Below are positions 3,791 to 26,206 of a stretch of 26,268 nt of DNA, one piece after another. The stretch's first letter is position 1, and the number at the start of each line of letters is the position of its first letter. A program made the translations under genes and the position numbers. The stretch is from assembly GCA_002269645.1 (NCBI GenBank), contig NIVC01005101.1:1-26268 (forward strand), given 5' to 3'. Below the pieces are notes generated by a model. That model made no database searches and had not been told where the DNA came from. It was given only the letters and a program-made list of their open reading frames with translations. This stretch comes from Macrostomum lignano (Eukaryota).

Positions 3791-4724
3791 TACACCTTTT
3801 CACGTTCAATTTTGAACAAAGTCCAGTTCTAAAAAAACTAGCGGAAATTCAATTCAGACAATTCAGACTGGGGCAACAAAACCCAGTTCAAAACATTCTG
3901 CTACGGAAGCGAGGTTTAGCCATAGACAAAATTGTCCCCAGTCTGAATTGTCTGAATTGAATTTCCGCTAGTTTTTTTAGAACTGGACTTTGTTCAAAAT
4001 TGAACCAAGGACGACTTAAGTAGAAGGACGGGAAACCTCGTTTCTTAGAAAATTTTTGAAGGCACTCTTTCCCGAAAAAAATACACTGCGGAGATGGGAA
4101 ATTTTCATTTTTTCAGCACAAAAATTGCTATAACTTTTGATAGGAGGCAGATCCAATGTTGATCTTTTGATATATTGTGCCTTTTTTATTGCTCTATCGA
4201 TATTTATAAAGCTTTCCGTTCAGAAAATTAGGATTCTATGTTAATTTTTTATTCTACGTATATTTTCATGTGTCTTGTGCTTGAAATACATTAGAATGCC
4301 ACGGCTTGGCTCTTTGATTTTATGAGTCTATTTTATCCTTCTTACCTGACTGTATAGCAAATAGTCGTAACATAGATGATAAAATGGATTCATAAAACCA
4401 AATATTAGAGCTGTGTCATGCATTTTTGTGATTTTTAGATACAGGAAATATACGTAGAATAAAAAATTAACATAGAATCCTAATTTTCTGAACGAAAAGC
4501 TTTATAAATATCGATAGAGCAATAAAAAAGGCACAATATATCAAAAGATCAACACTGGATCTGCCTCCTATCAAAGTTATAGCAATTTTTGTGCTGAAAA
4601 AATGAAAATTTCCTATCTCCGCAGTGTATTTTTTCGGGAAAAAGTGCCTTCAAAAATTTTCTAAGAAACGAGGTTTCCTGTCCTTCTACTTAAGTCGTCC
4701 TTGAATTGAACGTGAAAAGGTGTA
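3791..4724. mobile_element. Outer MITE (~230 bp without the insert) with ~83-bp TIRs, probable TA TSD (Tc1/mariner-like), interrupted by an inner element
   Basis: Left arm 3791-3873 (TACACCTTTTCACGTTCAATTTTGAAC...CAGACTGGGG) is the reverse complement of 3937-4005 joined to 4712-4724 (...GTGAAAAGGTGTA). The TIR contains the direct repeat AATTCAGAC x2. Superfamily is inferred from the terminal TA only. Confidence 0.85.
4006..4703. mobile_element. 698-bp non-autonomous foldback DNA transposon, hAT-like (8-bp TSD)
   Basis: Termini CAAGGACGAC...GTCGTCCTTG. Arms 4006-4265 and 4446-4703 are near-perfect inverted repeats (about 6 differences counted by eye). An exact 8-bp TSD, AATTGAAC, lies at 3998-4005 and 4704-4711. 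No ORF. Confidence 0.9.
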
Positions 4725-8500: not shown

Positions 8501-8599
8501 AGAGTCCGAGTTAAGCTGCGTGTCTGCAGAAAAGTGTTTAATGAAGGTATTAGTGGACTTTGAATGCCTACCCCTGATTCTAGTCAGGCGCAAGGACAT
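5502..8599 (-). CDS. SVOP: SV2-related protein (SVOP-like) MFS transporter, ~534 aa. Exons 8599-8572, 8523-8375, 8166-7681, 7506-7378, 7301-6819, 5831-5502
   Basis: Junctions are phase-compatible GT-AG with no frameshift or stop. Motifs: FYSVEEAVERLGFGKFQ, ADAMEMLLLSVLGP, SDKRGR, EYLP..HRAK, LGWRYL, LPESARF, DWLGRR, YTTEVYPT.IRSIGLG.CSAMARFG...APFVAQV, LPIETRGR. The start ATG at 8599 is the most plausible choice but is unproven. Confidence 0.92.
6061..6300 (-). mobile_element. tRNA-derived SINE-like repeat, diverged copy A (SVOP intron)
   Basis: Minus strand has a box A-like TTGCTCAGCGGT (6297-6286) and a weak box B GGTTCCGCTC (6250-6241). It then carries TTAGGGCT, ACAACCAAGGGCC and CCTGTGTGAGCGTG blocks shared with the copies at 15.5 kb and 23.9 kb. 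Confidence 0.55.
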
Positions 8600-11321
8600 C
8601 CTGAACCGGATCTGGGCCAAGTAATCTTCACTACAGATTCAATTTTAGACACATGTAGCCTAACTCCATTTTTTGTTTATGATTTTGTGGTAGTTCTAGC
8701 TTTAACTTCAGGTTCTGGCTCACGGTCACTTTGATTCATTGTATCAGTCAAGTTGGTAATTAAGACGATCCAGTGAAGGATCAATTTCATTCGCTGCAGC
8801 AGTGCATTCGGCTAAGGACAATAAAGGTCAACCAAGAGGATATATCCAATAAAATTCAGGATTCTCTCCTTGGTTGTTTTTTAGCTAGATAGAGTCCTAA
8901 GCTCGGCTTTTATGCTATGAGAGATATTAGCTTGAAATTATGAGCTATCCACTTGATTGTGCATTTAATACTCACAAGCAACAGTTCGCAGTCTAGATTC
9001 GTCTCCGTAAATTCGATGCACCGTTCCTGGTCTGCTGATTGGATGCATTGAAAAGCAAGTAGCAGTTCTTAATGAACTTGCAGCTTGAATTAAATAAACA
9101 CGATCGAATGACTCACTTCGGAACCGTCTGCAGCTGATTTTTGCAGTTTATAGCATGCTCTCTGGTCATGGGTAGAGAATAATGGGTTGCCTTCTCTCCC
9201 GTATTGTGCTCACTGTGCACAGTGGGGAAGAGAATATTTCTATAGCACTAGAGCAAGCGCAGGGATCTCAATAGTTGTTGCTCGTTATTTTGTTCAAATT
9301 TTTACTTCGCTGGCCGGCTAGCTTTCTCGAATCGGAACTACTTTCATTTAGTGAGGGGGACAGAATTTGAACCTACTGTAAATGTACGCTCCTAAATTAC
9401 CATTGCCATTGGATTAAGGAAATGAAAAAAAATTCAGAATATTTGCTAACGCATCATACCCTTAGCTACTTAATTTCGTTCTCTAACATTCAGAGTTCAA
9501 GGGATCCTTCATTTGGAGCAAAATGACGAGTTGACCATGGTAAACGCTTTTTATATGTTTGCATGAAGAATAGGAGCGATAGTAATGCTATGTTATGCCC
9601 CCCATTATATTACCACTTAATAATGTTTATGTTATCCCCACACCCCAGCTTTCATTGTGTTTTCCTGCCTAGAATGATGGAGACATGAATAGCGTCAAGA
9701 GGGGTTTGTGTCACACCTTATCTCGTGATTAGTATACCTTTTTGACGAAAAATGCCCTGAAAGAAGTCCTCAAAACATTTGAGACTTTGATATACCTAAA
9801 ACCACAGCTTAAAGCGTTCACCATTCTTCAGTAACTCATAAACGTGCATGCCCTCAATCATTCTCATGTGACTATCGTCAAGTTTTAGTACAATTTTTCA
9901 TAAATGGCTGTATTCTAGAGGGTCCTGATAATACACAATGAAAACATATTAAACTCAAAATACCAGAACTCAAAATAAACTCAAATCATAAAATGACTTG
10001 GAAGATTTCCAATCACATTAAATCCGAATTTATCCCATTTCTCTCCATAAAGATCGCCAAATGCTGAAGTAGTCTGGTTTTCGGCATAACGGTAGCTTTT
10101 TGGCTCTAAATAGAGAGATTGGTGTAAAGAAATCGGCACCCAATGCTTCGGGCTCCATTTTGACTCTTTAAGTTCACATCTACTTTGAAGCTGAAAGAGC
10201 CCACCAACCCATGCGAGGCACGTTTATTCGTGAGACTCGTACAGTTCCTCCCCTGCTTCATTCCGCATGGCAACGACAGCTGGGAATCGCAGCATGGCAA
10301 CTAACACATCGCTACACACAACTGTGGGGGTTTAAGCATTGCCCGTAGGACCGAGCGCTGTTTTAACTCAGCTTAATGCATGCCGTAACATCAATCTAAT
10401 ATGCTACTCAAGCTGTTCTTATAGCGATGTGGAGAGAAGAACAGTCCTGCGAAAATTCTAATCTTTTCAAATTATCTAAATTCACAGTCTTCACTTTCGA
10501 GTTGAGGTATGAACCTGGACAGACTATGCAATAAGACGGACCAATTTGTCAAAGCAATCAATTTCATTAAAAATGAAGAGAAATCGAAGCAAAACGATGG
10601 AGATTGGGACTCACTAGCACCAATACCGCTACGTCATCCACTAAAACGCCGTTCAGCATGTGCTACAGCCGGGTCATTAGGATCGCTCCGGCATCACAAC
10701 GATGACCGAGCAATCGAAAAGTTGCATCTGGTCTGTATGTATGTATGTCTCGCGACATTCAGTCCCATGTAGCTGAATATTAAATTTGTGCAAAGGCTCA
10801 ATCGTGGTGTAGATGGTAGAATACTGTATGAGATACCGTATGTATATCGATCAGTCCTGACCTAATCAGTTCTGTCCATGAATATGCAATAGATATAACA
10901 AGCCGACGATAGCGCGAAAGTCACCTATATTAGTTGTGTGTAAAAATTTCTTGGCGTTGATCTTGTATGACCCCTTTCATCTGGTAAAACTCTACTTGCA
11001 CTAATCAACTACTACTTAAGATCAACAACAACTCTATAATAACAAAAACATGACGGTGATATTCAGTGCATTTGGTGAGTGCAAAGCGCTCGTGTCGCAC
11101 AGTGGACCGTGATTTTCCTGGAATTCCATAACCTTATTGTTGTGTATGCGGCTAGCACACCGTCTTGGAGTGATAGTGCGCGTGGCGCCTTTGGATTGGC
11201 TAGGTCTAGGCCAGGGGTGGGGTTTTGTTGTTTACGTGACTGACTAGCTAAATATATTAGTACGCACAGGCCTTTAAAAGCCTCATGTGTTGTTTTCCCA
11301 ACCTTCTCACTTATTTCTCCG

Positions 11322-12970
11322 TTGTTCCTTTGGCCATGCTGCCTCATATCTAGCATTTCCGAGCCAAGCGTGTTTCTCGACCACCCAGGACAGCCAAAAA
11401 CGCCTTGGAATCGTTGGATCGAAGAATTCAAGATCTACTTGGAAGCCTTGGACCTAAAAGAAGCATCAGAAGCACGAAAGAAAGCGATTCTTGTTCATCT
11501 GCTTGTCTAGGAGGGCCAGCGAATCTTCGCGCTGAGGAATCTGCCCACGGCTCGGGTCGACACCTTCGACAAGCTGGTGGAAGAGCTGAAGACAATCTTC
11601 GGCCAGTCTCACAGCACCATCAACAACCGACCGCTACAGATTCAAGTCACGCGCCCAGATGCCTGGTGAGCCGATTAGCCAGTTCGTTGACACCCTTCGC
11701 GAACTCGAAGCAGATTGGAATACGGCGCTCTTCGAGACCAGATTATCAGGGATCAGATCATTGAGAAGACCCATTCGGCGCGCATCAGAGAGCGACTGCT
11801 CATGGAGAAGGTGCTTGAGCTGGAGACAGCCTCAGCCCTAGCGATTCAGGTCAAATCCGCCATTAACGACGCCAAGAAGCCGCGCGACGGCAAGAGCGAC
11901 AAGGAGCATGAGTCTCGGATCCAGAAGGTCAGCCAGCGCCCGCCACGCAAGGGACCCAAGCACGCGACGCCGCAGAAATCCAGCTCGGACGAGCGATGCG
12001 TCAATCGCGGAAGAGCTGGGCACGCCGCCCACGCCCCCGAGTGTCCAGCGAAAGACAATACCTGCCTGCACTGCCACTGGGTCGGTCATTTCAAGTCCTG
12101 TTGCCGACAGCGACGCAAGGTTCGCACCGTCAAGGACGACGACGACGATGGGCCATTCGAGGTGTCTGCGGTTCAGTGCGCAGCATCACTTCTAAACTTC
12201 GTGGACTGCAGCATCGCCGTCATCGACGTAAAGCTCCTGTTGGACACTGGCTCAAGGTTCAACATCATCAACGAAAAGACCATGAAGCGCCTGCCGAAGC
12301 AACCCGTCATTCCGCCGACTCACAAAAAAGCTTGCCGACTCGTCGTGTACCAGGGCAAGGCTGGAGTCTGCCGATTCTTTATCACGCGGCGAGGTGCCAA
12401 CATCCTTGGTATCGGCGGCATGGACAAGCTCGGATTCTCGATCCGGGTCAAAAAGATCAGCAGCGTTGAGGACATCGCCGAGGAGTTCCCAGGCATCTTG
12501 GCAGGGCCAAGAAGTTCTGCCATAGACCGCAACTGCGCCAGGATGCGACGCCGACGGTCGAGCCGCTGCGCCGGGTGCCGCTGGCGCTGTAGGACCGCGT
12601 GAAGGACGAATTGAACAAGATGGAAGCTGCAGGCGTCATTGCGAAGATCGACACGTCTCCCTGGGTGTCGAAGTTGGTCGTCTCCAAGAAGAAAAACGGC
12701 GACCTGCGACTCTGCGTCGACCTGCGAAACTGCAACCAGCCATCAAGCCGGACAAGTTCCCCGTGCCAACGCAGGAGGAGCTGACCGCCGAGTTTGCGGG
12801 CGCCCAGATGTTCGCCAAGTTGGACCTGAAGCAAAGCTACCTGCATATTCCGTTGCACCCCGGCAGCAGGCAGCTGACTGCCTTCATCACTCACTGCGGT
12901 CTCTACCAGTTCACGAGAGTCCCATTCGGTTCGTCCAGTTCCGGCGCCCGTTTCCAGAAGATCCTGCCAA
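11322..12970 (+). mobile_element. Degenerate Ty3/gypsy LTR retrotransposon fragment (gag, Zn knuckles, aspartic protease, N-terminal RT)
   Basis: Gag-like FLDHPGQPKTPWNRW and RKKAILVHLL*EGQRIF, PGEPISQF, IRDQIIEKT..RIRERLL. CCHC-like H..ECPAKDNTC..C..VGHF..CC. Protease LLDTGS. RT signatures VKDELNKM..GVI, SPW..LVV..KKNGDLRLCVDLR, FAKLDL.QSY, TAFIT..GLYQF.RVPFG. Several stops and frameshifts; similarity ends near 12970, before YxDD. Confidence 0.93.
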
Positions 12971-14281
12971 CCTTGTTTCTTTGGCTAACGCTGCCTCATA
13001 CCTAAAACTTATATTTCATTTACTTTGTCTTACATTCTCGGCTCTTACATCGCTAATTTACACTCACCATCGGCAAGTCACTCCGTACTGGCCAATAGGA
13101 AATACAGAGGTGAAGAGGTGAAACAGCGAACAGCATGTATGACGATCTTTTGAGACAGCGCTCGAGCGGCAGCATGGTGAAAATTCTTAAAAATGATGCA
13201 GAAGAACGCTAAGCAGAACTTTTCTCGTGTTTAAAAGTTGCGTTTCAAGGATGCAGCTTCCAGGGACAACAAGGAACTTATTTTTCGGAGCTATCCCTAA
13301 GACTAAGGGATTCACTAATAAACTAATTTATCCAATTGGTATGTCTACGGCATAAATACTTGGTATATTAACGGCTGCCTAAGCACTTTCCAGCCGTAGC
13401 TTTGACTGATCAGATTCCTTGAAGGCCGACCAAATAAGCCAATTTGAATTCCCTCCCTTATTACGAAGTAAAACCAGTGACTTTTGAGTATACGCTCATG
13501 CGACTGCGATTCCAAGTCAAAAAGAACATATTAATCATTCGGTATTGTCTCAAAAAATGAACTTGAGAAAATTATGCAGATTGGAAACTTTTGAATTGGA
13601 CTTAAATAACGAATAATAGGAAGCAATCTGATGCGTTTGGAAGATGAGCTACCAAAAAAGAAACCATTGTTTCTAGACTTGACCCAGCAAGTTAGCAACT
13701 CTTCCCCAAGCCTTTCATTTTTAACTGCAGGTTTTTGTCTGCACCAACAGATGGGCGATTGATGAATTTCTCATCTGAATATCCCCTGTCAAGTTGTTTT
13801 GCTGACGTGGAAGTAAATGATTGATAGTTTGAATTGGTTCGGCTGTAAGCGCATCTGGATTGCTTTTTTCACCTCTTCAGTGAGCAAACAATCTCGAATA
13901 GATATAGGAGAAATTGCTTCCTGCTCTATTTGTAACAGCTGAAGTTTTTTGTGCAGAAAATTGTACAATTAGACGAGGGACAACATAAAAAATTGGCAAA
14001 GCAGATTGCTCTTGAACGGGGAAGCGTTTAAGGTCATAAAAACTAGATCCAAATTGTTGAAAAAATCGAGAAAATATATCTCTTGAGATGGATGACCTTC
14101 GAATGCATACGCTGAAGTTACGAAAAGCTGCCGTTGAGTGCCTGTCACCTGATGGATTGGTTTGCCTTTTTTACAGGCCAATTTTGCATTTATTTGGACG
14201 AAAATTTGTTTGGAAAGGAATCAAAATCTCTCTAATTCTCAAGTTCCGTTGAGACTCATTCAAACATTGGCTATTTTATCA

Positions 14282-17200
14282 ATGTATCTGCTTTGGAAGT
14301 ATCCTCAAAAGCCGTTAATTCTTCTTCTGCTGCTGCTGATATCCTGCTCAACATTGAGCGGTAAAGAAATATCGCCTCCAGTAGGTAAGCTACGAGCGTG
14401 CTGTAGCCTTGGTTTCTATGGGAAATTATTTAATATTTATCTCACACTGCGAACAGCGGCCTGTTTAATGATCACATGAGCAGGGGCTCATAAAATCATT
14501 ACAACGTACATGAAAGCTTAGGCTTATGGCAAGACAGAGCGAAAAGAACGGGAGAGAATAGTGTGCAACCTTCCCGATGCCCGTACGAGTACAGAATATC
14601 AGTTAGTTAGTTAATCTAGAGTTCAGCAACCAGATACCAAAATTTCTACTATTAAAAGCTCACTCTGCATTAACAACCAGAAAATTATTATCAAAATAAT
14701 TATATTTTTCCGGTTCCAAGGCTAAAACACACATGTGACAATTCTACAAATATTCGGTGTCCTATTCATTGAACAATTAAAAGGACTCTGAACTACATGT
14801 ATAAAGCAAGATCATGGCGGAGAAAGGCATGAATTCTTATCAGTAAAATAGGGGAATTACTCGTACTTTTCTCTATACATGGTACCTTAGTTCGACAATT
14901 TCTATCGGCTATGGTGAAGAGGTCCACCTTAGGCCTTTTGTGGACACCATGCATGGTAGGTATTAGCACAAGTGTTTATTGGGAGCAATCCATTCTTTGA
15001 ATGAAAGACGAACTACTTTGCAAGCTTGGCATGTCGCTTGATATCGTCTTCCTGGTCTCTCTCACAAGTTCAAAACTTTATAAGCAGAAAATATCAACCA
15101 CCTTTTGAAGCTTAAAATTTAGCAGGGTTTGAGATTCAACTTGAAAATTTATGACTTTAAAAAGCCTTACCTAGTTATTTCAGCCTGTTAAAAACCTAAA
15201 AAAGTGGACGATAACACGATGAATGGACGAAATCAAATGGACGATTTAAAATTTTTCCATGAACTGCTTCTGATTGTCTCAGAATGCGTGTTCGAAAAGA
15301 ATAATTAATCGGCCTAGAAACAGTTGTCTTTCTTGACAATGGTCTCAATCGATGAGCATAGACTCGGACAGCACTCATACAAATTTATATTTAACTTTCA
15401 TTGTGCAACCTTTTCGACCAGCAGTTTCGCATTAATCTACGCTACTCAATATTGGTACATGTATAATACGATATTTTTATGCCCACTTATTTTATTTCAT
15501 TAAAAGCAGGGTGCACTTTCAGCGACATTGTCACACAGTCGATGAGAGGCATTAATTCCAATACGTACGGCGTTATACGCACAGGCACACACTCACACAG
15601 GAGTGTACATCGGCTAACTTCATTTCTCATTAGGCATATACGATTCACTGTGCCTCGGGAGTTGGGCCTCAAGGGCATTAACTGCCCCGTTGAAAACGAG
15701 GGTTAATCTTGAAAGTAAATTAACAAAAGGTAACTTCTGGTTAGTTAATTTACCACAGTTTAACTTTCGAAAAAGTGGATTTACGTTAATTAACCACAAA
15801 CACTTTGTACGTTAATTTCGGTTAACAAACTCATAAATTAACGTAACTTACCCTCCATAGAGTAAAGTAACGTCAAGTAACGTTTATTCACCTAAATTCA
15901 CACGTTAGTCAACCTTCAAGCTATTAGTTAACTAACCCCACAATATTAGCCCTCGTTGTCAACGGGGCACAACCATAACCAAGCCGAGATTCCAATTCAG
16001 CCCTAAATTAATGTGATTGCACTTGGAATCGAGCCTGGGCCGCTGGTACATCAGAGCTCTTATCGATCCCGAACTGTGGGGTGGGAAGGTCCAAGTTTTA
16101 TTCCGCTATCGATTTTCAAGGCGGCTTCGTTTCGATACATGCCTTCCTTCCTTGGGCATTAAATGCACTCCAAATCGATTCGGAAAACTTCAGGAAGCAT
16201 CCAGCTCGAGAGACTCGAAAAAACTGCCACCGGACTCGGTCGCAACGTCCCATCTGGAGCGTTGCTATGGCAACCAGTGTCCGCGTCCGACGACCTGCTG
16301 CAACTTCCTATGGGAAGCTCGTCACCCGCCAGATTGTCGCCAACCTCCGACGTCACTCTGCGCTTCTTCCTGCCGATCCGCTTCAACTTGACCGGCCTGC
16401 TGTTGCGCGGATTCCCCGACGTCGGGGCGGCGCCAACCGGATTCTCCGCCGCCGCTTTTCCCGGAAACAGCCTGATTAGCGACGCACCGAAAGTTTCGGT
16501 AAAACTGAACGCGTAGAGCTACTTACAGCAACTTTTTTTAACATGAATTATCTAGCTCGTACATTTACAGTAAATAAGACTAAGGAACCTAATATTTTCC
16601 CCTGATTTTGCACTCAACTGAGTATCATTCAAAAGAATTTTGACGCCTAAATTGTTTTTTTTGGAAAAAATATCGACGTTAACCTTCCTAATAGCTGAAC
16701 TTCGCTTCTACAGACTACAGATCTACGTTCACTGATAATTTTTACTTATTAATGATCATATTCACTCATAGATGGCCAAAATTTAACTCAAAGAGTTAGA
16801 ACTCGCAAAGATCCAATTACAGTCTTTGTGAGCTTCTGTGTTTTAAGTGCACCTGAGGTACTCCAGAGTAGCAAAAAGTGTTAGAACCGACTGTCTCTCA
16901 ATGAACTTGCTTTTCCAAGAGTAATTTATTATTAAAGAATAACCGACAGTCTCTTTGGCTTACACTTACAACTCAACCGATTTGCATGACACAAAAGCCA
17001 GTCAGCGTTTCTTCGTCACTTAAAATGACTTCACCACAATAAAAAAATTCAGACGACTTACCTGCCGATCTACTCTAGCGAAGGCTTCGCTCCAGTTCGG
17101 TTTTCAGCTGCTCAAAGAGCTCAGCTGCTGCAAGTGAAGTTTGGTACATCGAGCGGCACACGTCGGATGCAGATGGATCTCATGGGCCACCCTGATCCAA

Positions 17201-20200
17201 CAGGTGCGACTTTTACTTTGAGATTGAGACACTCACTTGAGGGCTGATTGCTCAAAAATCTTGAGTTGGATTTTCTCTCCAGCCGCGTCAATTTTTGGTT
17301 CGCTCTCTCAAAAAGTGGTCTGGGGCTTTTCGTGCTTTTAGTTTACACCTTCGATGGTAGAAGGTTGCCTAACAAGTGAGGGGCCAGATCTCTTACACAG
17401 TTTCTTTGCATTGATAAGTACTTTTAGGCGGACCACTAGTCAAGATCAAAACGTTAGGATCCATCCGTCTACCGGTATTGACCTTGCTTTGCGGCTGTAC
17501 CTAAACGCTTTTTAGAAAATGACTACCTATCCAACCAAATATCCAACTCCAGCTTGTGGCGTCATTCCAAGCGAAAAATACTCGGCCAGCTTGCTACGAC
17601 ATACCAGCAACAGCGTGCTTGCCATAAGTTTCGATCGCAACTCTACCTACCACGTGACATCATTCGCGCTCGCGGGTCTCAACGCCGATTCGAGTTTTTG
17701 GCTGTCTTTCGCTGATACAGCTGGTAGATTCAAGAACCTCAGCATCCTGCAGCACAGTGGGAACAGTAATATCTCTGGCCTGGACCCATTCTTGGTAAAC
17801 CAGTACTCGATTTACAATGAATCAACGTTTTGGCATGTACACGTAAAATTTCCTTACCAAAATCCGAGAACTTCAATTCCAACACACAGTTCGTGAAGAC
17901 ATTCAACCAGGAGACTTTCGTCATGCCTCTTCTGCTCCCAGTTCGTCAGCTACGAATCCACTTGAGTACTGAGACTCTTGTGACTACCGTTGACCAGATC
18001 AGGGGTTGCGAGCTGACAGGTAGATTCTAAACTCTCTCACGTGTCCAATAAGCAGCGACCTGTCAATCTGTCAAGTCAATTACTTTCTTTTAGACTGCCC
18101 GGTAGGTTGGATCGAGCACCTGAACTCCTGCATCTCCATTCAGCACGCTCGCTACACCTGGGATCAGGCCAGGGACTTCTGCAGCCTTATTAGTTGGAAC
18201 GGAATCAATGCCAGCCTCTTTGCTGCTAAATCGGCCTTTGACAGGAACATTGTGCAACTCGGGTGAGATCATTGGTACCTTTAATAGTACTATTAAAGCT
18301 GAGAATTAAAGGGGATTTCAGTATACAGGATAACTAAGCAGTTGAAATCATTCATTTAAAATTCAATTTCATAAATCACTGGCAAGCTGGTGAATATCTG
18401 TCTATCTGTACTACATAGTAGTCTGTGTGAAATGCGGTTAGTTTTGTCAGCTTGTGCTCCGCAACATTCCGGACCAGACTTATAAAAAGCAGCTTTGGTA
18501 TCTTGCAAATGGTAGATTCACCACTTACCATCTGGTGCGTGGGTTCGATCCCTCATCAATATCGAAAATCCTCGCCAGTAGGTTTTGTGCGATTTATGCT
18601 TATATACTCATCAACAGTCAAAAGTTTCATCCTCCAAACGAGATGAATTTTTTTCACTTATTGCGAGTGACGCAACTTACGGCACGCGCGAAGCTTATTG
18701 CCACTTGGGAGTGGCATAGCTCGTAATGGTCCAAGATGACAACGCGCCGTGACACCGAGCCGATGCTGTTAGTCAACTGAAAGAACAGCTACAGCTGCGC
18801 ACTATGCGCTGGCCTTCCCGGTCCCCAGACATGAATCCCATCTAGCATGTCTGGGACTTCCTAGAACGCTGCGCTCGAAAAGAAAATTCACCACACAATG
18901 TTGCAGAGCTGTATCATGCCCAAGGACCACTAGAAGGAACTTCTAGAAGTTACACTAGTTAAGTTACACTAGTGAAGTTACACTTGAAAACGCTGGGCAG
19001 CAGCTTCCTCAGGACTTTCTGCGCCGCCTCATCTTGAGGATGCACCGCAGAGTCGCCGCACTTTTGCGTGCGTGGAGATCCCACACGCGTTATTAAGCAT
19101 CGCAATTCTAACTGAATATTTCATAAAAACTGTTATAATTTTGTGCGAAATACGTTTATTGATTTAATCAACTTTCCCTTCCTCGCGGTGTCTTAGCTGC
19201 CTAACTGGAGGGTTGAATTGTGAGTGAAAAGTTGTCGCAATACTCTCGCTTGGAAAAATTTTCATCTCGCTTGGTGGGTGGAACTTTTGACTGTTGCTGA
19301 GTATAAGTGCTCAGCGGTCTTACCGGGTGGTCATTGTTGGCTGCAGACTCCCTGCAGCACCCTGCGAGCTAACCACACGTAGTTGATACTCCGCAGTTCC
19401 TTCCCAGCTTCGGACGACCAGCAGCTATTTGTTGGGTCAGTCAGAGACCCGACTACTCAGCAGTGGCAGTGGTCTGACGGTTCCCCCATGGAGCCGGGCG
19501 CGTTCTTCATGGGCCGCCCCTCCAAGCGGTGCGCGGCTCTGAGCGTCAGGTTTGCTGCTCTCGTTGAGGTCAGCTGCTCCATCAAGCTGGAGTTCGTGTG
19601 CCAGCTGCCAAAGTACATTTCGCCGTACCGGACTAAGCAAAAGGTGCTGGTCACCGCGCCAGCAGCTGCTCAGTCAGCGACCGAGAAGATGGCCAGTCTG
19701 GGTACCGGACTCGCTGCTCTTGATGAGGCAGCCAAGCTCCTCTTCATCGACTCATTTGTAGCATCAGCTGCTGCAATCGAGCTGAATACTGGGCTGACCG
19801 TGACGGCAGTGGCTGGAGCTGAGAATGCAGCGTCTGTCACTGCGAACTCGGTGCACTACAGAGTTGCCGAAAGTTCACCGAGGTGAGAACATCTCAGACT
19901 GGCTTAATTTGTGTAAGCAAGTTCCAAAGTTGCTAAGAGACACATTTTCGATCGTGCTCCTCCTCAGGCTGCTCGGAGCCTCTACTCCCTTTAGCCGCCA
20001 TCGACTCAACTGGCGAGCTGCCGTTGCGCCCAGCGAATCGAGCATTTCTAGGAGCCGCTCAGGCCTACGAAGGTAGCGAATGAACCCATTAAACCAATAC
20101 CTCTGAAAAAAACTAAACCTTACAAAATCTGTGCAAATTTTCAGACCACACGAAATGCCAGATGGGCTACCGGGACTTTAACTACTATGATTACGGCTGG

Positions 20201-23200
20201 TCGATGAGTCAGCTGGATGGAGGCCCGTGCACCCCGTGGCCTCCTGGCGAGCTAGCGGGCTTCGACAGGTCCTGCGTGTCCACGGCTGTATCTCAGATTA
20301 AATGCTCCAATTTCACTTCTCAGGTGTCCTGCCTGAGCTCCGATATTTTGTGTGGTAAGCTCTTGCGTTTCTTTATTTCCGAGCCGAGTATCACAGCAGC
20401 TCATATTAATTTTGACTTTGAAATTAACCAACCCTTAATATAGCGGACTTTCACCAGCCAATCGATGACTTCAATCCTGATAGCGTTGGTCACATCGGCT
20501 TTGACAAGGACTACTATTTGAATGAGGTTTCAATCCAGGCGACTCAATCGGAGGAAGAGACAACGCTGGAAGGCGAGGCAGAAATAGCTGAGAATGGTGA
20601 CTACTGGAGACGGGTGGTCGATCTAAAAACTGACCACGAGATCATCGGATTTAGAGCTTTTGCTGGTGAGAGAAGATGTCGTGCTTTGAGCTAATAAATC
20701 AGTCGATGAATTGATTTTTTTATCTGCTAAATGAAGAAAAATTCTAGCCCCTGAATGGTTCCCCAGGATTCCCGCCCCTTGATATTCTTTGCTTTGCTAA
20801 ACTTTATTCTCAAACAAGAATAAAGTTGCCAAACTGCCTCTGATCAAGTCTTGACAGTTTGCCAGCCTCAACTGCTAGGTACCCTCACTAAGTCTCTCAA
20901 GCATTCAGTAGTCATCCAGACGCCATCAGCTCCTTCAACAGATGGCACCAGTCGACTATGAACACTCTATCGCAAATTTCTCTGATGTCGCTGACCAAGC
21001 TTCAAAAGCGGGCAAACTTCCAACTTCCATAGCGGAGAAACTTATATGATATATAAATAAACATAAACAAATTTCTCATGCATCGATTCATTAAACAAGG
21101 AAAAAGTCGCCACACATCCAGACCGCCAAGATATTCAACTATTCTTTAAGAAAGCTTGACTTTTCCATAAGCGCTAATGTATTAAGAACAGTACATTCAG
21201 TACACCCATGTGCGCATATTAGCGCTGTCGTTCATTATGGCCTTGCCAAATCTTGGCAGATTTTAACAGTTCGTCGACCACATGTGTCCGCATTATCCTT
21301 AACTTCGGTAGTCTCTGGCTTTGATTTAGGCTATGCTTCCGGACTTTCAACAGGTGGCAACATTATAGTTGCTTGCTGACACTCAGTTGCACAAATATCA
21401 CATTTTACTGAATGGAGCCCTAGTTTCATAGTTTACCTGGATAATTGCACCTTAAAACTTCCGCAAAGCATGCAAACCCATAATTGTACCACGGCAGGGA
21501 TCAGCTACATCGGCTGTTTCCAAGACTCCGGAGCTCGCGACCTCCCCCTGTGGCGGCTGACCTCCGGCACAACCGTCAGCGTGTGCGCTCGGGTGTGCTC
21601 AAGATATCTGTACTTTGGCACGCAGTGGTATGCTCACTGCTTCTGCGGAAACTCCTATGGTCGGCACGGCCGGGTGGCCGAGTCTCGGTGCAACAACCGG
21701 TGCAGGGCGAATCCAGCCGACATGTGCGGCTCCTGGTTCAAGAGCAACATCTTCACCACTGGCCGTTCTAGTGCGTGCATGTGAAAGAAGGAGGATCAAA
21801 ACATGTCTTGTTTAATCGACACAAATTTATCTCATTTATTGTTAAACTGCCGCATTCGGAATCAACATTGACTTCTACTAAAGTTAAAGAAAGTTTAATC
21901 AGCCATTTTCAGAAAGTGTAAAACATCATTGACCCTATTCACCTAAGCAAGAGTTTAAAAAACACCCATTTGCCGCTCCTGACTCTCTAGTGTCTCAGAA
22001 GCCTAGCGTGTTTAATATTTTATTAGAAACTAAAATCTTTGTGTAATCAACTCTTACGATCCACTGACATGACAATAATTCTTCAGTGAAACCTTGGAGC
22101 GCCAACAATCTGACTGTGAAGGTTGGCAGCAGCTGGGATCCAACCCTGAAAGACGACGCTTTCAAGAACTGGACAGAATGCGCCACGTTCAGCTACCCGG
22201 AGTCGAGCTCCGACTCGCCACTTCAGCTGCTGTGCCGCGGTCGACCAGTTGGGAGATTCGTGGCTTTCCTGCAGGGCGTCTCGGCCGGTAGGCACGGCTG
22301 GAAACAGCTCAGGCTGATGGGAAACGAAGGTAGGTGGCGATGCTGGCCATTATTTCTACAAGTTGGCTAGGAATGCAGCTAGCAGAGTACAGTGCTGACA
22401 CTGTTAGGAGTGACTCTCAGTGGCTGCAGTGAGGGTTAGACGCTGTTGGCGAGTATGATAGCAGCATGTGTTAATGACAATATAGAAAATCAATCTATAA
22501 ATAACCTTGAATTGGGTCATCGATTTGCAACCGTCGATGTACAAGATTTTATTGGCTTTCGGTGCTAACAAGAATTTAGACACTTCAGTATATTTTCGAG
22601 TAAATATGTTCATTAAACTTGTTTTCGCATTTGAAAATTTACAATACTTCAAAATAGTAAGGCTGCACGATCGCCAGCCACTGCCACGGTTTCTAAAGCG
22701 ATTTCCCGAGCCGCTGACGCGCAGAGCTCGGCTGGATGGCAGGATAGATTTCCAGGCAAGACTCGGGACAGGTTCGCTCTGGGTGTACCTGACGGCCCAT
22801 TATGAGCAGAGCGACATTCTACTCAATGTAAGCCTCATACTGCAGTTATTATATACTAAAGTTTAAATACACGGATCTGATTCTGTCCTGTTTTGTCATT
22901 CCAGGACAGATATGAGCTGCTGCTATCAGCCAACCGGTCTCACCTGTCCCTAACATGGCACTCTGTGCGCTCTGGCCGAGTCACTGTGACGCCAGACTTA
23001 CTCGGCCCCCCATTATTAACTGAGTTGAGCAGCGAGACAATCAGCTGCTCGACAGATGGGTTCCAGCCAGTCAGCATCGCATGGACCAATTCTTCATCGG
23101 AGCCCGTACAGATCTCCGTGTCCGTGTGCGGGCGTTCGCTTGCGGTCGTGAAGGACTCGGTAGTCCGGGCATGGAAAATATCCCAGGCTGCCTACTCATG

Positions 23201-26200
23201 CGGCAGCAGCTCAAAATGCCCACAGTTGGTTTTCGACATCATTAGTAAGTTGCTGGCTGCGATTTCCAACCGAATGCTGTAATCGCGATAAAAGTTTTGA
23301 CACTTTTCAGATGACCGTTACATGGGTTTCTGGACTGCGCCCGGCTGGTTCAACAAAGATTACATCGAGGTAAAGCAGAGAATCGATCAAACTGAAATAT
23401 CAACAGTTTGTAAAAATTTAATTCATTGTTCAATTTCAGGCCATTTTTCGGTTCCCAGTCACTGTGTTCTTTGTTCCATGCAAGGCGGCACCGACAGAAC
23501 TGCAATGCTGAAGGACACGTCAGCCTGGGTTGTGGATGCTGTACTGCACTTTTCAACCGATGGCAGAGGCTACATGAAGCATCCGACAGTGAGTCTCAAT
23601 TCGCTTTAATATTTTAAATCCAATTCTTTCATTTTAGCTATTTTACTCTTTTAGACAATAACAGGTCCCAGCGCTCCACAGTACGTGAGCTCCCAAGTGC
23701 TGCAGCCCGAGGTTAGCGGCCTGAACTTTCGCCTCTACATTGGCAACTACAAGAAGCGACCTGAGCTGCGTTGGATGCTGTACGGCTGCACAGATGGTGA
23801 GGCTGTCTTTTTAGTTTAGAGTAGGACGAGCGCATCTTGGCGCACTTTAAGCGACATTGTCACACAACCGACAAGGGTTATTACTACTGCCTATTTTGCC
23901 GACTCACCAGAGTAGGCACACAATCGCGCGGATATATACGCAGTAATACGCACAGGCACACACTCACGCAGGAGTGTATAGCGACCCTAACATTATTTAT
24001 TGTTAGACTTGTACAATTCACTGGGCCTTGGTTGTTCGCCCTTAACAGCACCAGTAGACCTAAGCCAAGATTCCAATTTAGCCCTAAATAACGAGTTATA
24101 TGACCGCACTTACACTCGAGCCTGCCACTAGCACATCAGAGCGCCACGCTAGACCACTGGGCTTTTCGTTGTAGAGCACTGTAACATAATTCACCAGTAC
24201 AATCAACTCTTCCCGCAGGTTTGAATCCGCCGCATCGGCCGCAGCCGATACCAATTCACTATAGCCAGGTAGTGACGTCATCCGATCCCAGAGCAAACTT
24301 TCTGTCGGCAGTGGATGGCAACAGAGGTGCAGGTGGCGGATTCTGGGTGAGTTCGGTCCAGCCCAGCTCTCCCGCCTTCATTGGAGTGCTGTTCAGCTCA
24401 AGACGCTTCATCAACTATCTTATAGTGTGGTGCATCAGTTCCGCTACTTCAAAGAGCGCAAGTATGTCGCATTGCTTTGTGAGCAGACTTCATTAAGAAG
24501 CAAAGATTCAGTGTGAAGTAATGACTGTCAACTTGGCTTTTCAGACGATCGCGTGCTCTATCCAGCAACTGTGACCAGCCTGTTCGTCTCGAACTCGAGT
24601 TCCTACTCAGACGGTCGAGTGGTTGACGCCAAGTGGAAGTCATTAATTCCGTTTCCATGGAGGGCCGACGTGAATGAAGTGAGTTGAATTTCTGTTGGGA
24701 GGGCAAGTGCTAGTATTAAGACAAACAAACTTTAACGTTCTCCTCAGCCTGCACTGCATGCCGGAATCGTAGCTCAATGGAATGCAACAGCTTCGTCATC
24801 TGCGTTTCTGCGAGTATATGAAATTGAAGTTTATGGAAATCCATCAGGTCAGTACTATGGTTTTTATGTTCTAAAAATTCGATGCATTTTTCCAAAAAAA
24901 TATCACCTACCTGAGCAGAGCTTGATCAAGATAAAGCACATGGCAACTATGACGTATCGATTGGTATCGGAAATCAACTGCCTGTCACCTGCGCGTTTCA
25001 CGAGGACACGATCGCCTCCAATGGGGACTTCTCCGGCGATGTTTATTCCCTACCGCTGGACTTTCCTGGAGATGAGAGCTTTCACAGCGCTCTCATTCTG
25101 AAGACTTCGGGAATTTTTTATGTGCAACTGCCTCAGATTTTCAGAAATCACGGGGCTCATCATCAGAGGTGCAGCGCTGCGAGCAACTGATCTTCTTGGC
25201 TATGTAACCAGCCTCAGAGTAAAGCACACAGATACCACTGATAAATCTGATTTAAAATCTATCGTCGATCCCCAGAGAGGAACATCAGAGGTGAGTGGAA
25301 AGTGAAAACAGGCTTGTGAAGTATTATTCTTCTTAGTTTTATTGTGAGTTACCGCAACTGACGAACTGAATTTCCTGGCAAAGACGCACTAAATACTATT
25401 TTAGCTCCTCGTACCCGGACCAGAAGATGAGGTCCAGCCAATGCGAAGATATTTTCCCAACCCGGTCCGAGCGAGACTGATGTCTCTGCAGGCTGTGAGA
25501 TTCGAGAAGCGCCCGATGCTGAAACTGGACTTGATTGGATATCCTGACGATCCGGGTAGGTCACAAAAAAGATACTTTACTTTTATTTAAAGTAGAATGT
25601 AAACTTTTCCACCGACGTTCTTCCTTCTTAGCGTGCGAGAACCTCACCAGAATCAGCACTACATCGCATCGTCTCTGAACTCCTCAATGCTAAACTTCGA
25701 GTTTCTGTCCGACTACCACATCAACTTTATTTACATCAATGCGAATTGGCCAGTGCAGTTTTACATCTCAGGCGAAGAACTGGTTGGCGAAAAATTCACT
25801 GTGAATGTCAGCGAAGTCAGCTGGGTGGTAGGAGAACTACGATGCTTTCTATTTATTCTGAAATATTTGTGATGGAGCATCTAATATTTTTCTTTAATAA
25901 TTGCAGTTTGAGACCCACAGGGCGCAAGAAAAACTAGTCATGCCTCATCTGTACCACTTTCGTTGGATGAAACTTCATGTGATTAACGGGAGCTTGGCTC
26001 CCAGCCAGGTGACTCTGAGCGGAGTCGCCTGTCTTGGCTGTCCTGTGAACTTCATTCTCACGCTGGGATCTGCTTTCACTTGTCCAATGTGAAGGCTTTG
26101 TGGGAGTCCGCGCTTCGAATGTGCCAAAGGTTCCACTGGGCTGGTCAGCAGGGCACACTGCTGATGGTGAAGGACCAAACGCTGCTTAACTTTCTTAATA

Positions 26201-26206
26201 TTCTGG
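14282..26206 (+). CDS. Large secreted/surface mosaic lectin-like protein (>1650 aa, 3'-partial) with six +/-1 frameshifts (pseudogene or consensus errors). Exons: 14282-14360, 16194-16498, 17053-17203, 17516-17842, 17890-18019, 18094-18262, 19397-19882, 19968-20072, 20145-20354, 20444-20665, 21498-21770, 22087-22329, 22658-22827, 22905-23244, 23311-23369, 23440-23588, 23655-23796, 24219-24461, 24545-24678, 24748-24847, 24919-25290, 25405-25555, 25632-25827, 25907-26206
   Basis: Signal-peptide-like first exon MYLLWKYPQKPLILLLLLLISCSTLS|G. 24 exons have GT-AG borders whose phases chain once six single-base indels are allowed. Recognisable discoidin, CTL, WSC and fucolectin motifs occur throughout. 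Boundaries of exons 1-2, the 21498 acceptor and the final donor are less certain. Confidence 0.8.
15511..16080 (-). mobile_element. tRNA-derived SINE-like repeat, copy B (interrupted by a TIR element)
   Basis: Box B-like GGCTCGATTCC on the minus strand (16035-16025). 15575-15607 matches 23946-23978 at 32/33. The blocks GCACTTT.AGCGACATTGTCACACA and AAGCC.AGATTCCAATT.AGCCCTAAAT are also shared with copy C. Confidence 0.7.
15683..15969. mobile_element. 287-bp MITE with 25-bp TIRs and TG...CA termini
   Basis: TGCCCCGTTGAAAACGAGGGTTAAT (15683-15707) is the inverse of 15945-15969 with 2 mismatches. It is absent from the homologous position of SINE copy C. Confidence 0.8.
16194..18019 (+). other. 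Two tandem discoidin/F5-8 type C-like domains (coding segment of the mosaic gene)
   Basis: First: VTLRFFLPIRFNLTGLLLRG...RAQLLQV...RRMQMDLMG. Second: CGVIPSEKYSAS...LAISF..YHVTSFALAG...PVRQLRIH...IRGC. Both resemble divergent discoidin strand patterns. Confidence 0.6.
18495..18555 (+). repeat. Possible degenerate tRNA-derived (SINE head) remnant
   Basis: Canonical box B GGGTTCGATCCC at ~18541-18552, with a weak box A-like GCAAATGGTAG about 35 nt upstream. No acceptor stem. Confidence 0.35.
18947..18986. repeat. Short tandem repeat, 14-bp unit AAGTTACACTAGTK x ~3
   Basis: AAGTTACACTAGTT AAGTTACACTAGTG AAGTTACACTTG read directly. Confidence 0.85.
20444..22329 (+). other. Fucolectin/F5-8C-like beta-sandwich, split into two halves by the WSC exon
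   Basis: N-half YWRRVVDLKTDHEIIGFRAF (end of exon 20444-20665). C-half NLTVKVGSS...EC...LQLLCRGRPVGRFVAF...LRLMG (exon 22087-22329). Confidence 0.6.
21498..21770 (+). other. WSC carbohydrate-binding domain encoded by a single 273-nt phase 1-1 exon
   Basis: YIGCFQDSGARDLP...TTVSVCARVC...YFGTQWYAHCFCGNSYGRHG...CNNRCRANPADMCG...NIF carries the eight-Cys WSC pattern. Confidence 0.9.
22658..23244 (+). other. Farnesoic-acid-O-methyltransferase-like (Methyltransf_FA) domain, divergent
   Basis: IDFQAR..SLWVYL...RYELLL..N.S.L...TPDLL...F..VSIAW...ISV...KD...I..AAYS parallels the recalled FAMeT pattern. Assigned from memory only. Confidence 0.5.
23311..25555 (+). other. Three further discoidin/F5-8C/fucolectin-like domains
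   Basis: (a) FW....DYIEAIFRFPVTV..MQGG...WV...HFSTDG...NFRLYI...LRWMLYGC; (b) PIHYSQVVTSS...AVDGN..FWVS..FIGVLF...LRVYEIEVYG; (c) FYVQLP..EITGLIIRG...YVTSLRV...FPNPVRARLM...LKLDLIG. Confidence 0.8.
23841..24165 (-). mobile_element. tRNA-derived SINE-like repeat, copy C (uninterrupted)
   Basis: Minus-strand head AAGCCCAGTGGTCTAGCG (box A-like) followed by GGCTCGAGTG (box B-like). Body is collinear with copy B on both sides of the B insertion. Confidence 0.7.
25632..26206 (+). other. Discoidin-like domain followed by the N-terminal half of C-type lectin-like domain 2
   Basis: MLNFEF..YHINFIYI...VMPHLYHFRWMKLHV, then GCPVNFILTLGS/CFHLSNVKALWESALRMC...TLLMVKD..LLNFL, with a -1 shift at ~26070. 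Confidence 0.7.

What the first reader, a model, noticed from the sequence alone, without database searches (positions are those of the whole stretch)
14282..26206. Giant mosaic carbohydrate-recognition protein combining at least five module types
Seen: a signal-peptide-like exon followed by F5/8C-like x2, CTL, a divergent linker, a Cys-rich segment, a fucolectin-like domain containing WSC, FAMeT-like, F5/8C-like x4 and a second CTL, continuing past the window. The ORF track misses it because of short exons and frameshifts. Established: discoidin, fucolectin, CTL and WSC are all glycan- or surface-binding folds. Inference: a multivalent glycan sensor for immunity, mucus or adhesion, or the ectodomain of a polycystin-like or adhesion-GPCR-like receptor. 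I do not recognise this architecture as a named family.
Basis: partly seen in the sequence, partly recalled or inferred. Interest (0 to 1): 0.72.

Follow-up and report, generated by a model that had tools for sequence, protein, structure and literature searches.

The report
Flatworm mosaic lectin-like gene, frame-broken
The region holds a real multi-exon gene from a Macrostomum-type flatworm for a secreted mosaic protein, but only two C-type-lectin-like domains and one WSC domain can be identified; the other claimed lectin folds are unsupported, and as assembled the reading frame breaks at three or four places.

Summary
A real plus-strand, multi-exon coding locus spans about 14.28-26.21 kb. 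An exon-chaining score is 270.6, against 32.5 on the reverse strand and 10 +/- 5 in shuffles. A codon model trained only on the neighbouring genes scores every exon positive in its own frame. Verified parts: a signal-peptide exon, a full C-type lectin-like domain split by an intron that holds a Tc1/mariner remnant, one WSC exon, and the N-terminal half of a second CTLD. The F5/8C, fucolectin and FAMeT assignments have no support from Pfam (E<=10), PDB sequences, hhalign, or AF2 with Foldseek. New here: the 5' block (M1-M2-CTLD) and the 3' block (M6-U7-CTLD2) are an ancient internal duplication (z=25). Module boundaries are phase-1 introns, the signature of exon shuffling. CTLD1 lacks the EPN/WND sugar-binding motifs. 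Exons 1-7 form an intact 529-codon ORF that ends in a stop. The downstream exons form long in-frame islands, separated by normal-looking introns whose phases are off by one, plus a well-supported frameshift inside CTLD2. So the giant protein is not encoded intact: the cause is partial pseudogenisation, assembly indels, or more than one transcript. No relatives were found beyond the CTLD and WSC families. Interest is modest.

The parts
14282..14384 (+). Exon 1: ATG plus signal-peptide-like sequence (MYLLWKYPQKPLILLLLLLISCSTLSG...), donor GTAAGC, ends in phase 1
   Evidence: It is the only strongly hydrophobic segment of the product.
16194..17203 (+). Module M1, unknown fold: exons 16194-16498 and 17053-17203, with a phase-0 intron inside and phase 1 at both ends
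   Evidence: Codon scores +26.1 and +10.5 in frame. Homologous to M6 (z=6.4). No Pfam hit.
17553..18019 (+). Module M2, unknown fold: exons 17553-17794 and 17890-18019
   Evidence: Codon scores +13.1 and +8.2. Homologous to U7 (z=6.3, 1/2000), with the intron at the same aligned position and phase.
18094..18262 (+). CTLD1, N-terminal half exon (DCPVGWIEHLNSC...NIVQLG), donor GTGAGA, phase 2
18263..19396 (+). 1134-nt intron inside CTLD1. It carries a Tc1/mariner-type remnant: a DDE_3 fragment at about 18738-18909 and 53-nt inverted repeats at 18603-18655 and 19253-19305.
   Evidence: DDE_3 E=1.7e-7, 31.7 bits against a cut-off of 28.6. Inverted repeat 87% complementary.
19397..19886 (+). CTLD1 C-terminal half plus an Ala-rich tail. 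A strong donor follows 19882, and the in-frame TGA at 19884-19886 overlaps it.
   Evidence: Spliced Lectin_C E=1.1e-8. Exons 1-7 read as a 529-codon ORF ending at this stop.
19968..20354 (+). Exons 19968-20072 and 20145-20354 (the latter Cys-rich, 6 Cys), both phase 1-1. They are out of phase by one with the preceding exon.
20444..20665 (+).
   Evidence: Codon score +11. No Pfam or PDB hit.
21498..21770 (+). WSC domain in a single symmetric phase 1-1 exon (273 nt, 8 Cys)
   Evidence: PF01822 E=5.1e-14, 52.7 bits against a cut-off of 27.8. 4430 relatives, best identity about 43%.
22087..22329 (+).
   Evidence: Codon score +23.3. No Pfam or PDB hit.
22658..23244 (+).
   Evidence: Codon scores +12.6 and +17.8. 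AF2 of 22905-23243 is all-beta with pLDDT 53. Foldseek finds nothing significant. No Pfam hit.
23311..23796 (+). Module U5: exons 23311-23369, 23440-23588 and 23655-23796. The 70-nt intron 23370-23439 has strong splice sites but the phases are off by one.
24219..24847 (+). Module U6: exons 24219-24461, 24545-24678 and 24748-24847
   Evidence: No Pfam or PDB hit. Exon 24748-24847 has strong splice sites but a negative codon score.
25145..25555 (+). Module M6, paralogue of M1: exons 25145 (or earlier)-25290 and 25405-25555
   Evidence: M1 against the frame-f0 piece plus the next exon: z=4.5, 0/500. Whether the upstream frame-f2 segment 24919-25130 belongs to this module is unresolved.
25632..26040 (+). 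Module U7, paralogue of M2: exons 25632-25827 and 25907-about 26040. The junction 25555>25632 is in phase only if the weak donor 25559|25560 is used.
26041..26206 (+). CTLD2, N-terminal half. The first strand (CPVNFILTLGS) is in frame f1 and the rest (CFHLSNVKALWESALRMCQRF...) in frame f0, so there is a frameshift at about 26067. The rest of the domain lies beyond the window.
   Evidence: Against CTLD1-N: f0 z=6.6 (0/1000), f1 z=3.9 (4/1000), joined z=9.9.

Best explanation
WHAT IT IS. The region is one, at least ancestrally single, plus-strand transcription unit of a Macrostomum-type flatworm. It encodes a secreted, modular, Cys- and sequon-bearing extracellular protein assembled by exon shuffling. 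The order of parts is: signal peptide; two lineage-specific modules (M1, M2); a C-type lectin-LIKE domain; an Ala-rich linker; a Cys-rich exon; several further lineage-specific, probably beta-rich modules with a single WSC exon among them; then a diverged second copy of the M1-M2-CTLD block.

SHOWN. Strand- and frame-specific coding signal. Canonical splice sites. Phase 1 at every module boundary. The CTLD and WSC identities. The internal three-module duplication. The absence of the EPN/WND motifs in CTLD1.

INFERRED. The intact form of the protein would be exported and would act as a multivalent binder of matrix, mucus or surface ligands. The WSC domain may contribute carbohydrate binding. 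The CTLDs would bind through a non-canonical, probably Ca2+-independent surface.

STATE IN THIS ASSEMBLY. The frame is continuous only from the ATG to a stop at 19884-19886 (529 codons: SP-M1-M2-CTLD-tail). The roughly 3.2 kb of downstream exons keep their codon bias and splice sites but fall into in-frame islands separated by +/-1 phase conflicts, and there is a frameshift inside CTLD2. Most likely the 3' two-thirds is a recently disabled part of the gene (a truncated gene with decaying exons). Uncorrected assembly indels are the main alternative.
For: CODING REALITY. The DP exon chain scores 270.6 on the plus strand, 32.5 on the minus strand and 10 +/- 5 (max 18.6) in block-shuffled controls. 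A codon model trained only on the upstream C2 and SV2 genes gives +268 in frame against -106 to -203 in the other five frames, and 18 of the 19 exons are positive, the short signal-peptide exon being about 0.

DOMAINS. Lectin_C E=1.1e-8 after splicing; WSC E=5e-14.

ONE UNIT. 19 of 23 junctions are in phase using strong GT-AG sites. Introns are mostly 66-114 nt. All module boundaries are phase 1. The conflict points themselves are normal-sized introns (85, 70 and 76 nt) with strong sites. No internal signal peptide or start codon opens any island.

DUPLICATION. The block alignment scores 148, z=25, 0/500, with a conserved intron position in M2 and U7.

FRAME BREAKS. The neighbouring SV2-like gene aligns to homologues over 159 aa with no frame change.

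TAXON. The SV2 exon is about 90% identical to M. lignano fragments, and the top WSC relatives are M. lignano proteins.

CTLD1 IS NON-CANONICAL.
Against: There is no transcript, orthologue or population evidence. No relative of any non-CTLD, non-WSC module was found, so exon boundaries rest on ab initio scoring and hand curation. A fully open, frameshift-free exon chain does exist if weaker splice sites are allowed, although it skips homology-supported exons and destroys CTLD2. Four apparent frame conflicts in 4.8 kb against none in about 2.8 kb of neighbouring coding sequence is not statistically decisive (about p=0.16), so assembly error is not excluded. Exons 1-7 end in a genuine stop codon, which also fits a separate shorter gene.
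Confidence: 0.6

Rival explanations
1. One intact giant gene. The +/-1 phase conflicts and the CTLD2 frameshift are assembly indel errors (or my mis-curated boundaries). In vivo the organism makes the full >1,600-aa mosaic protein, which continues beyond the window.
For: Downstream exons keep in-frame codon bias as strong as the 5' exons. They keep strong splice sites. They contain no in-frame stops within the islands: 8 and 7 consecutive exons stay open. Each conflict needs only a single +/-1 correction. The related M. lignano annotation itself contains frame errors, so indel-prone assemblies occur in this genus.
Against: The SV2-like and C2 neighbours (about 2.8 kb of coding sequence) show no frame break. 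The conflict sites are not long homopolymers.
Confidence: 0.3
2. Two or more separate genes. Gene A (14282-19886) would be a complete 529-aa secreted SP-M1-M2-CTLD protein ending at TGA. The exons from 19968 onward would belong to a different transcript, possibly SL-trans-spliced as occurs in Macrostomum, or to a pseudogene.
For: Exons 1-7 form a complete ORF with a start, a signal peptide and a stop. Splicing 19882 to 19968 breaks the frame. The 3' block is a paralogue of the 5' block, as a tandem duplication would produce.
Against: The gap is only 85 nt, with a strong donor and a strong acceptor, like the other introns. No AATAAA was seen in the short stretch after the stop that I read. The downstream unit has no start codon with a signal peptide although it encodes extracellular-type modules: the first in-frame Met is MGYRDF.... 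All exons share the phase-1 modular grammar.
Confidence: 0.2
3. One reading: a multivalent glycan sensor made of discoidin (F5/8C) x6, fucolectin, FAMeT, CTL and WSC folds, possibly the ectodomain of a polycystin-like or adhesion-GPCR-like receptor.
For: To the eye, several modules show discoidin-like motif order, for example ...LHFSTDGRGY... and ...LRWMLYGC. The AF2 model of one exon is all-beta. WSC and CTL co-occur in PKD1/REJ ectodomains (PMC1934368).
Against: No Pfam hit at E<=10 for any such module, even after curation. No match to PDB sequences. hhalign probability 0.09% against FVIII C2. The modules are not mutually similar except for the two paralogous pairs. Forcing a discoidin template predicted a frameshift at 17.85 kb, and the paralogue comparison refuted it. 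No REJ, GPS, PLAT, PKD or TM is present in the window. CTLD1 lacks the sugar-binding motifs.
Confidence: 0.1

Closest known systems
C-type lectin-like domain (CTLD) superfamily, non-lectin branch (NKG2D, DEC-205/PLA2R/FcRY CTLDs, lithostathine, LOX-1)
   Same: Full Lectin_C profile match. Six Cys in long-form positions. WxWSDG core. Best PDB hits E=3e-15 to 1e-6.
   Different: EPN/QPD is replaced by RPS and WND by VEV. The domain sits in a long mosaic with unrelated modules rather than in a type II receptor or a mannose-receptor-type array.
WSC-domain proteins, in particular the Macrostomum lignano WSC-repeat proteins (e.g. UniRef A0A1I8JE00, A0A267GC98)
   Same: WSC domain with 8 Cys, 39-43% identity. 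Same genus-level lineage.
   Different: Those proteins carry 8-13 tandem WSC repeats and share nothing else with this locus. Here a single WSC exon lies among non-WSC modules.
Polycystin-1 / sea-urchin REJ (PKD1 family) ectodomains
   Same: Large extracellular mosaics in which WSC and C-type lectin modules can co-occur (PMC1934368).
   Different: The defining REJ, GPS, PLAT and TM segments and the PKD repeats are absent from the 12 kb examined. The module order differs (CTLD precedes WSC here).
Flatworm temporary-adhesion proteins (Mlig-ap1 and Mlig-ap2 of M. lignano)
   Same: Same genus. [quoted passage not shown] Mlig-ap1 contains a C-type lectin domain (PMC6410801).
   Different: Mlig-ap1 and Mlig-ap2 have vWD, C8, TIL, EGF, TSP-1 and LDL domains plus Lys/Arg-rich or long tandem repeats and no WSC. 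None of those domains occurs here.

Membership tests
C-type lectin-like domain (Pfam PF00059 Lectin_C) | Profile match above the gathering threshold over the whole domain | tested here: met
   CTLD1 spliced: 36.2 bits against a cut-off of 22.6, profile 2-106/107. 93 PDB CTLD sequences at E<=0.01.
C-type lectin-like domain (Pfam PF00059 Lectin_C) | Second copy (CTLD2) recognisable | tested here: inconclusive
   No Pfam hit for the N-half alone, but it is significantly similar to the CTLD1 N-half (z=6.6 to 9.9). The C-half lies outside the window.
Ca2+-dependent carbohydrate-recognition CTLs (true C-type lectins) | EPN or QPD motif plus WND motif forming Ca2+ site 2 | tested here: not met
   The aligned positions read G-RPS and VEV. 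Sugar-binding CRDs (DC-SIGN) align only up to residue ~91. The best full-length hits are non-lectin CTLDs.
WSC domain (Pfam PF01822) | Profile match above the gathering threshold; eight conserved cysteines | tested here: met
   52.7 bits against a cut-off of 27.8, profile 1-81/82. 8 Cys in the exon.
F5/8 type C (discoidin) domain (PF00754) | Detectable sequence or profile similarity to the family | tested here: not met
   No hit at E<=10 for any raw, spliced or curated module. No PDB hit. hhalign probability 0.09% against FVIII C2. SW z<=2.4 against FVIII C2.
Fucolectin / FTP domain | Detectable sequence or profile similarity to the family | tested here: not met
   U3a+U3b, with or without the WSC exon, gave no Pfam hit at E<=10 and no lectin in PDB at E<=10.
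FAMeT / Methyltransf_FA domain (PF12248) | Profile similarity, or a matching fold | tested here: not met
   No Pfam hit. The AF2 model is low-confidence all-beta. Foldseek gives only generic Ig/FN3/MG-like matches with E>0.01. The fold part of the test is inconclusive because of the low pLDDT.
Polycystin-1 / REJ family | REJ, GPS and PLAT domains and TM segments | tested here: not met
   None in the three plus-strand frames of 14.0-26.27 kb. There is no TM-like segment apart from the signal peptide. Sequence beyond 26268 could not be tested.
Exon-shuffled extracellular mosaic proteins (phase 1-1 modules) | Modules bounded by phase-1 introns; symmetric 1-1 exons | tested here: met
   All module boundaries are phase 1. 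The WSC, Cys-rich, U3a, U3b, U6a and 19968-20072 exons are symmetric 1-1.
Tc1/mariner DNA transposon (intronic insert) | DDE_3 transposase similarity flanked by terminal inverted repeats | tested here: met
   DDE_3 31.7 bits against a cut-off of 28.6 (only profile 86-144/146, so a remnant). 53-nt inverted repeats, 87% complementary.

The most novel reading that the evidence does not exclude
The frame conflicts are assembly artefacts, and Macrostomum expresses an intact secreted (or membrane-anchored, beyond the window) protein of more than 1,600 aa. About ten of its modules would be previously undescribed beta-sandwich families, arranged around CTLD and WSC domains and amplified by a three-module block duplication. 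That would make it a candidate lineage-specific component of flatworm mucus, adhesive or surface-recognition systems.
Probability: 0.25. Interest if true: 0.5.

Novelty: new variant of a known kind. Interest (0 to 1): 0.3.

Why it matters
If the gene is intact and expressed, it would add a family of orphan extracellular modules to the flatworm secretome. It would also be a clear example of module-block duplication and phase-1 exon shuffling in a model flatworm genus that is studied for adhesion and regeneration. If it is a partly disabled gene, it is an ordinary case of turnover among lineage-specific secreted proteins. In neither case does it bear on a long-standing open question. The practical lesson is that domain names assigned by eye to short translated exons (F5/8C, fucolectin, FAMeT) did not survive profile and structure tests.

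Tried and rejected
(1) Two long concatenated queries to the search for homologous proteins.

(2) The exhaustive search with the WSC exon. It gave only WSC-family relatives, at most 43% identical, and tblastn of the 150 best against the window showed no other shared exon.

(4) A frameshift-tolerant DP. It placed frameshifts next to exon ends to repair phases and was rejected as an artefact.

(5) My own discoidin-template reading. It predicted frameshifts at about 17.85 kb and 25.1 kb. The first is refuted by the conserved M2/U7 intron. The second is unresolved: the frame-f2 piece is not significantly M1-like, and the in-phase acceptor 25144|25145 exists. My first proposal, an acceptor at 25103, was mis-indexed.

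(6) An HMM built from M1 and M6 found no further copies.

(7) Exact-match searches for the window's DNA in the metagenome, GTDB and IMG/VR collections, and for its WSC ORF in the gene-position index, all found nothing. The contig could therefore not be extended.

(8) No M. lignano contig for the syntenic SV2 orthologue was retrievable, because the entries are UniRef-only.

(9) No tRNA or Rfam family in the window explains the intronic repeats.

(10) The minus strand of the region has no Pfam domain and a chain score of only 32.5.


Full report
CONTEXT. The window is eukaryotic genomic DNA. Upstream of the finding lie three features: a tandem C2-domain gene on the plus strand (C2 E=7e-14 and 7e-17), an MFS/SV2-type transporter gene on the minus strand (MFS_1 E=4e-18), and a degenerate retroelement (RVT_1 E=1e-9). 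The large SV2-like exon finds its best matches in Platyhelminthes. In-frame stretches are about 90% identical to Macrostomum lignano fragments, and the garbled part of one M. lignano model matches an alternative frame of the window. The highest-scoring relatives of the WSC exon are also M. lignano proteins. The source is therefore a Macrostomum species, or a diverged paralogous copy in M. lignano. It is not present in any searchable contig or gene collection.

IS THERE A GENE? Yes. A dynamic-programming exon chainer (codon bias plus generic splice scores, phase-aware) gives 270.6 for the plus strand of 14.2-26.27 kb. The minus strand gives 32.5, and 20 block-wise dinucleotide shuffles give 10 +/- 5 (max 18.6). 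With the codon model retrained on the two upstream genes only, the 19 draft exons total +268 in frame against -106 to -203 in the other five frames; 18 are individually positive and the short signal-peptide exon is about 0. Hand curation shows canonical GT-AG sites, introns mostly 66-114 nt long, and a few long introns that contain repeats. The minus strand carries no recognisable domain.

WHICH MODULES ARE REAL? Pfam on the raw frames finds only a Lectin_C C-half, a weak CTL N-half, a DDE_3 transposase fragment and a WSC domain. After splicing 18094-18262 to 19397-..., Lectin_C is full length (profile 2-106/107, E=1.1e-8). WSC scores E=5e-14. The 1134-nt CTLD intron contains the DDE_3 remnant, bracketed by 53-nt inverted repeats. 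These parts also give no PDB sequence match at E<=10, and hhalign against factor VIII C2 gives probability 0.09%. The C2 bait sequence had been verified against PDB entries. The largest single-exon piece of unknown type (22905-23243) folds as a low-confidence all-beta model (pLDDT 53). Its Foldseek matches are generic Ig/FN3/macroglobulin-like sandwiches, none better than E=0.016. These modules are best described as lineage-specific, probably beta-rich modules of unknown fold. No relatives were found for them in the large protein collections.

INTERNAL STRUCTURE (NEW). Pairwise Smith-Waterman with shuffling shows M1 is similar to M6 (z=6.4; z=4.5 for the frame-safe part). M2 is similar to U7 (z=6.3; M2b against U7b 0/2000; crossed controls null). 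CTLD1-N is similar to CTLD2-N (z=6.6). The three-module blocks align collinearly over about 270 residues (score 148, z=25, 0/500). The intron inside M2 and the intron inside U7 fall at the same aligned position and phase. The intron between M2 and CTLD1 has no counterpart in the second block. The locus therefore contains an old internal duplication of an M-M-CTLD block. Every module boundary is a phase-1 intron, several exons are symmetric 1-1 (including the WSC exon), and intra-module introns are phase 0 (phase 2 inside the CTLD). This is the classical grammar of exon shuffling.

FUNCTION-RELEVANT DETAIL. The curated product has a single N-terminal hydrophobic segment (the signal peptide), 15 N-x-S/T sequons and 38 Cys, clustered in WSC (8), CTLD1 (6) and the Cys-rich exon (6). 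CTLD1's closest solved relatives are non-lectin CTLDs: NKG2D, DEC-205/PLA2R/FcRY, lithostathine, LOX-1 and snaclecs. Genuine CRDs such as DC-SIGN align only up to the loop region, and the EPN/QPD and WND positions read RPS and VEV. By established CTLD knowledge this argues against canonical Ca2+-dependent sugar binding. The only module with a (putative) carbohydrate-binding pedigree is WSC.

READING-FRAME INTEGRITY. Exons 1-7 splice into a complete 529-codon ORF that ends at TGA 19884-19886, overlapping a strong donor. Joining that donor to the strong acceptor at 19968 (an 85-nt intron) breaks the frame. From 19968, eight exons are mutually in phase (about 540 codons). A 70-nt intron with strong sites (23370-23439) is then off by one. 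Seven further exons are in phase (about 345 codons). The 76-nt intron 25556-25631 is in phase only if a weak donor 4 nt downstream is used. Inside CTLD2 the first strand (CPVNFILTLGS) is in frame f1 and the rest in frame f0, with each part independently similar to CTLD1 and the two abutting exactly (z=3.9, 6.6 and 9.9 when joined). That makes three robust conflicts and one that can be rescued, not six. A frameshift I had inferred at 17.85 kb from a discoidin template is refuted by the paralogue comparison, and one at 25.1 kb is unresolved. The SV2-like neighbour shows no frame change over 159 aligned residues. Even so, four events in 4.8 kb against none in about 2.8 kb is not significant (about p=0.16), so real lesions and assembly indels cannot be separated here. 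A fully open chain exists if weaker sites are allowed, but it drops homology-supported exons and CTLD2.

COMPARISON WITH KNOWN SYSTEMS. The locus shares CTLD plus WSC with PKD1/REJ ectodomains but lacks every defining PKD1 feature within the window. It shares genus, size and a CTLD with the adhesion protein Mlig-ap1 but none of its vWD, C8, TIL, EGF or KR features. It shares only the WSC domain with the M. lignano WSC-repeat proteins. It matches no characterised family end to end.

VERDICT. The best reading is a lineage-specific, exon-shuffled, internally duplicated secreted mosaic gene whose 3' two-thirds cannot be translated continuously as assembled. It is a new variant of a known kind, of modest interest.

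Noticed in passing
window 18440-19380 (DDE_3 fragment ~18738-18909; inverted repeats 18603-18655 / 19253-19305): A degenerate Tc1/mariner-type transposon sits inside the intron that splits CTLD1 and accounts for most of that intron's 1.1 kb.
   Followed up: partly
window 15510-16008 and 23839-24089; inverted repeat 15683-15711 / 15941-15969: An interspersed repeat (three collinear pieces, 80-85% identical) occurs in intron 1 and again in the intron at 23.8-24.2 kb. The first copy contains a 29-nt inverted repeat, which is MITE-like. No tRNA or Rfam match.
   Followed up: partly
window ~11300-13120 (+): A retroelement remnant: a 303-codon open segment with a CCHC-like Cys/His motif, followed by an RVT_1 fragment in another frame, in an unusually GC-rich stretch (up to 58%). 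It is degenerate and multi-frame, and lies just upstream of the lectin-like gene's first exon.
   Followed up: partly
window ~3730-4700: Translated plus- and minus-strand segments match each other at 75-100% identity. This indicates a large inverted duplication or foldback element in the AT-rich spacer between the C2 gene and the SV2-like gene.
   Followed up: no
window 564-2067 (+): Two C2 domains (E=7e-14 and 7e-17) in separate exons: the 3' part of a synaptotagmin/Doc2/rabphilin-type gene that runs in from the window's left edge.
   Followed up: partly
window 5505-8638 (-): An SV2-type MFS transporter gene with intact exons. The M. lignano UniProt model A0A1I8FBD2, named 'GPI mannosyltransferase 2', is in fact its homologue, and its middle section is translated out of frame. 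That points to an annotation or assembly error in that record.
   Followed up: partly
window 19640-19880 (+): An Ala-rich, low-complexity tail or linker of about 80 residues follows CTLD1 and has strong in-frame codon bias. It is the last segment before the in-frame stop/donor overlap at 19883-19886.
   Followed up: no
window 18020-18093 vs ~26020-26040: The phase-1 intron between M2 and CTLD1 in the 5' block has no counterpart in the duplicated 3' block, where U7 runs straight into CTLD2. An intron has been precisely lost (or gained) since the duplication.
   Followed up: no
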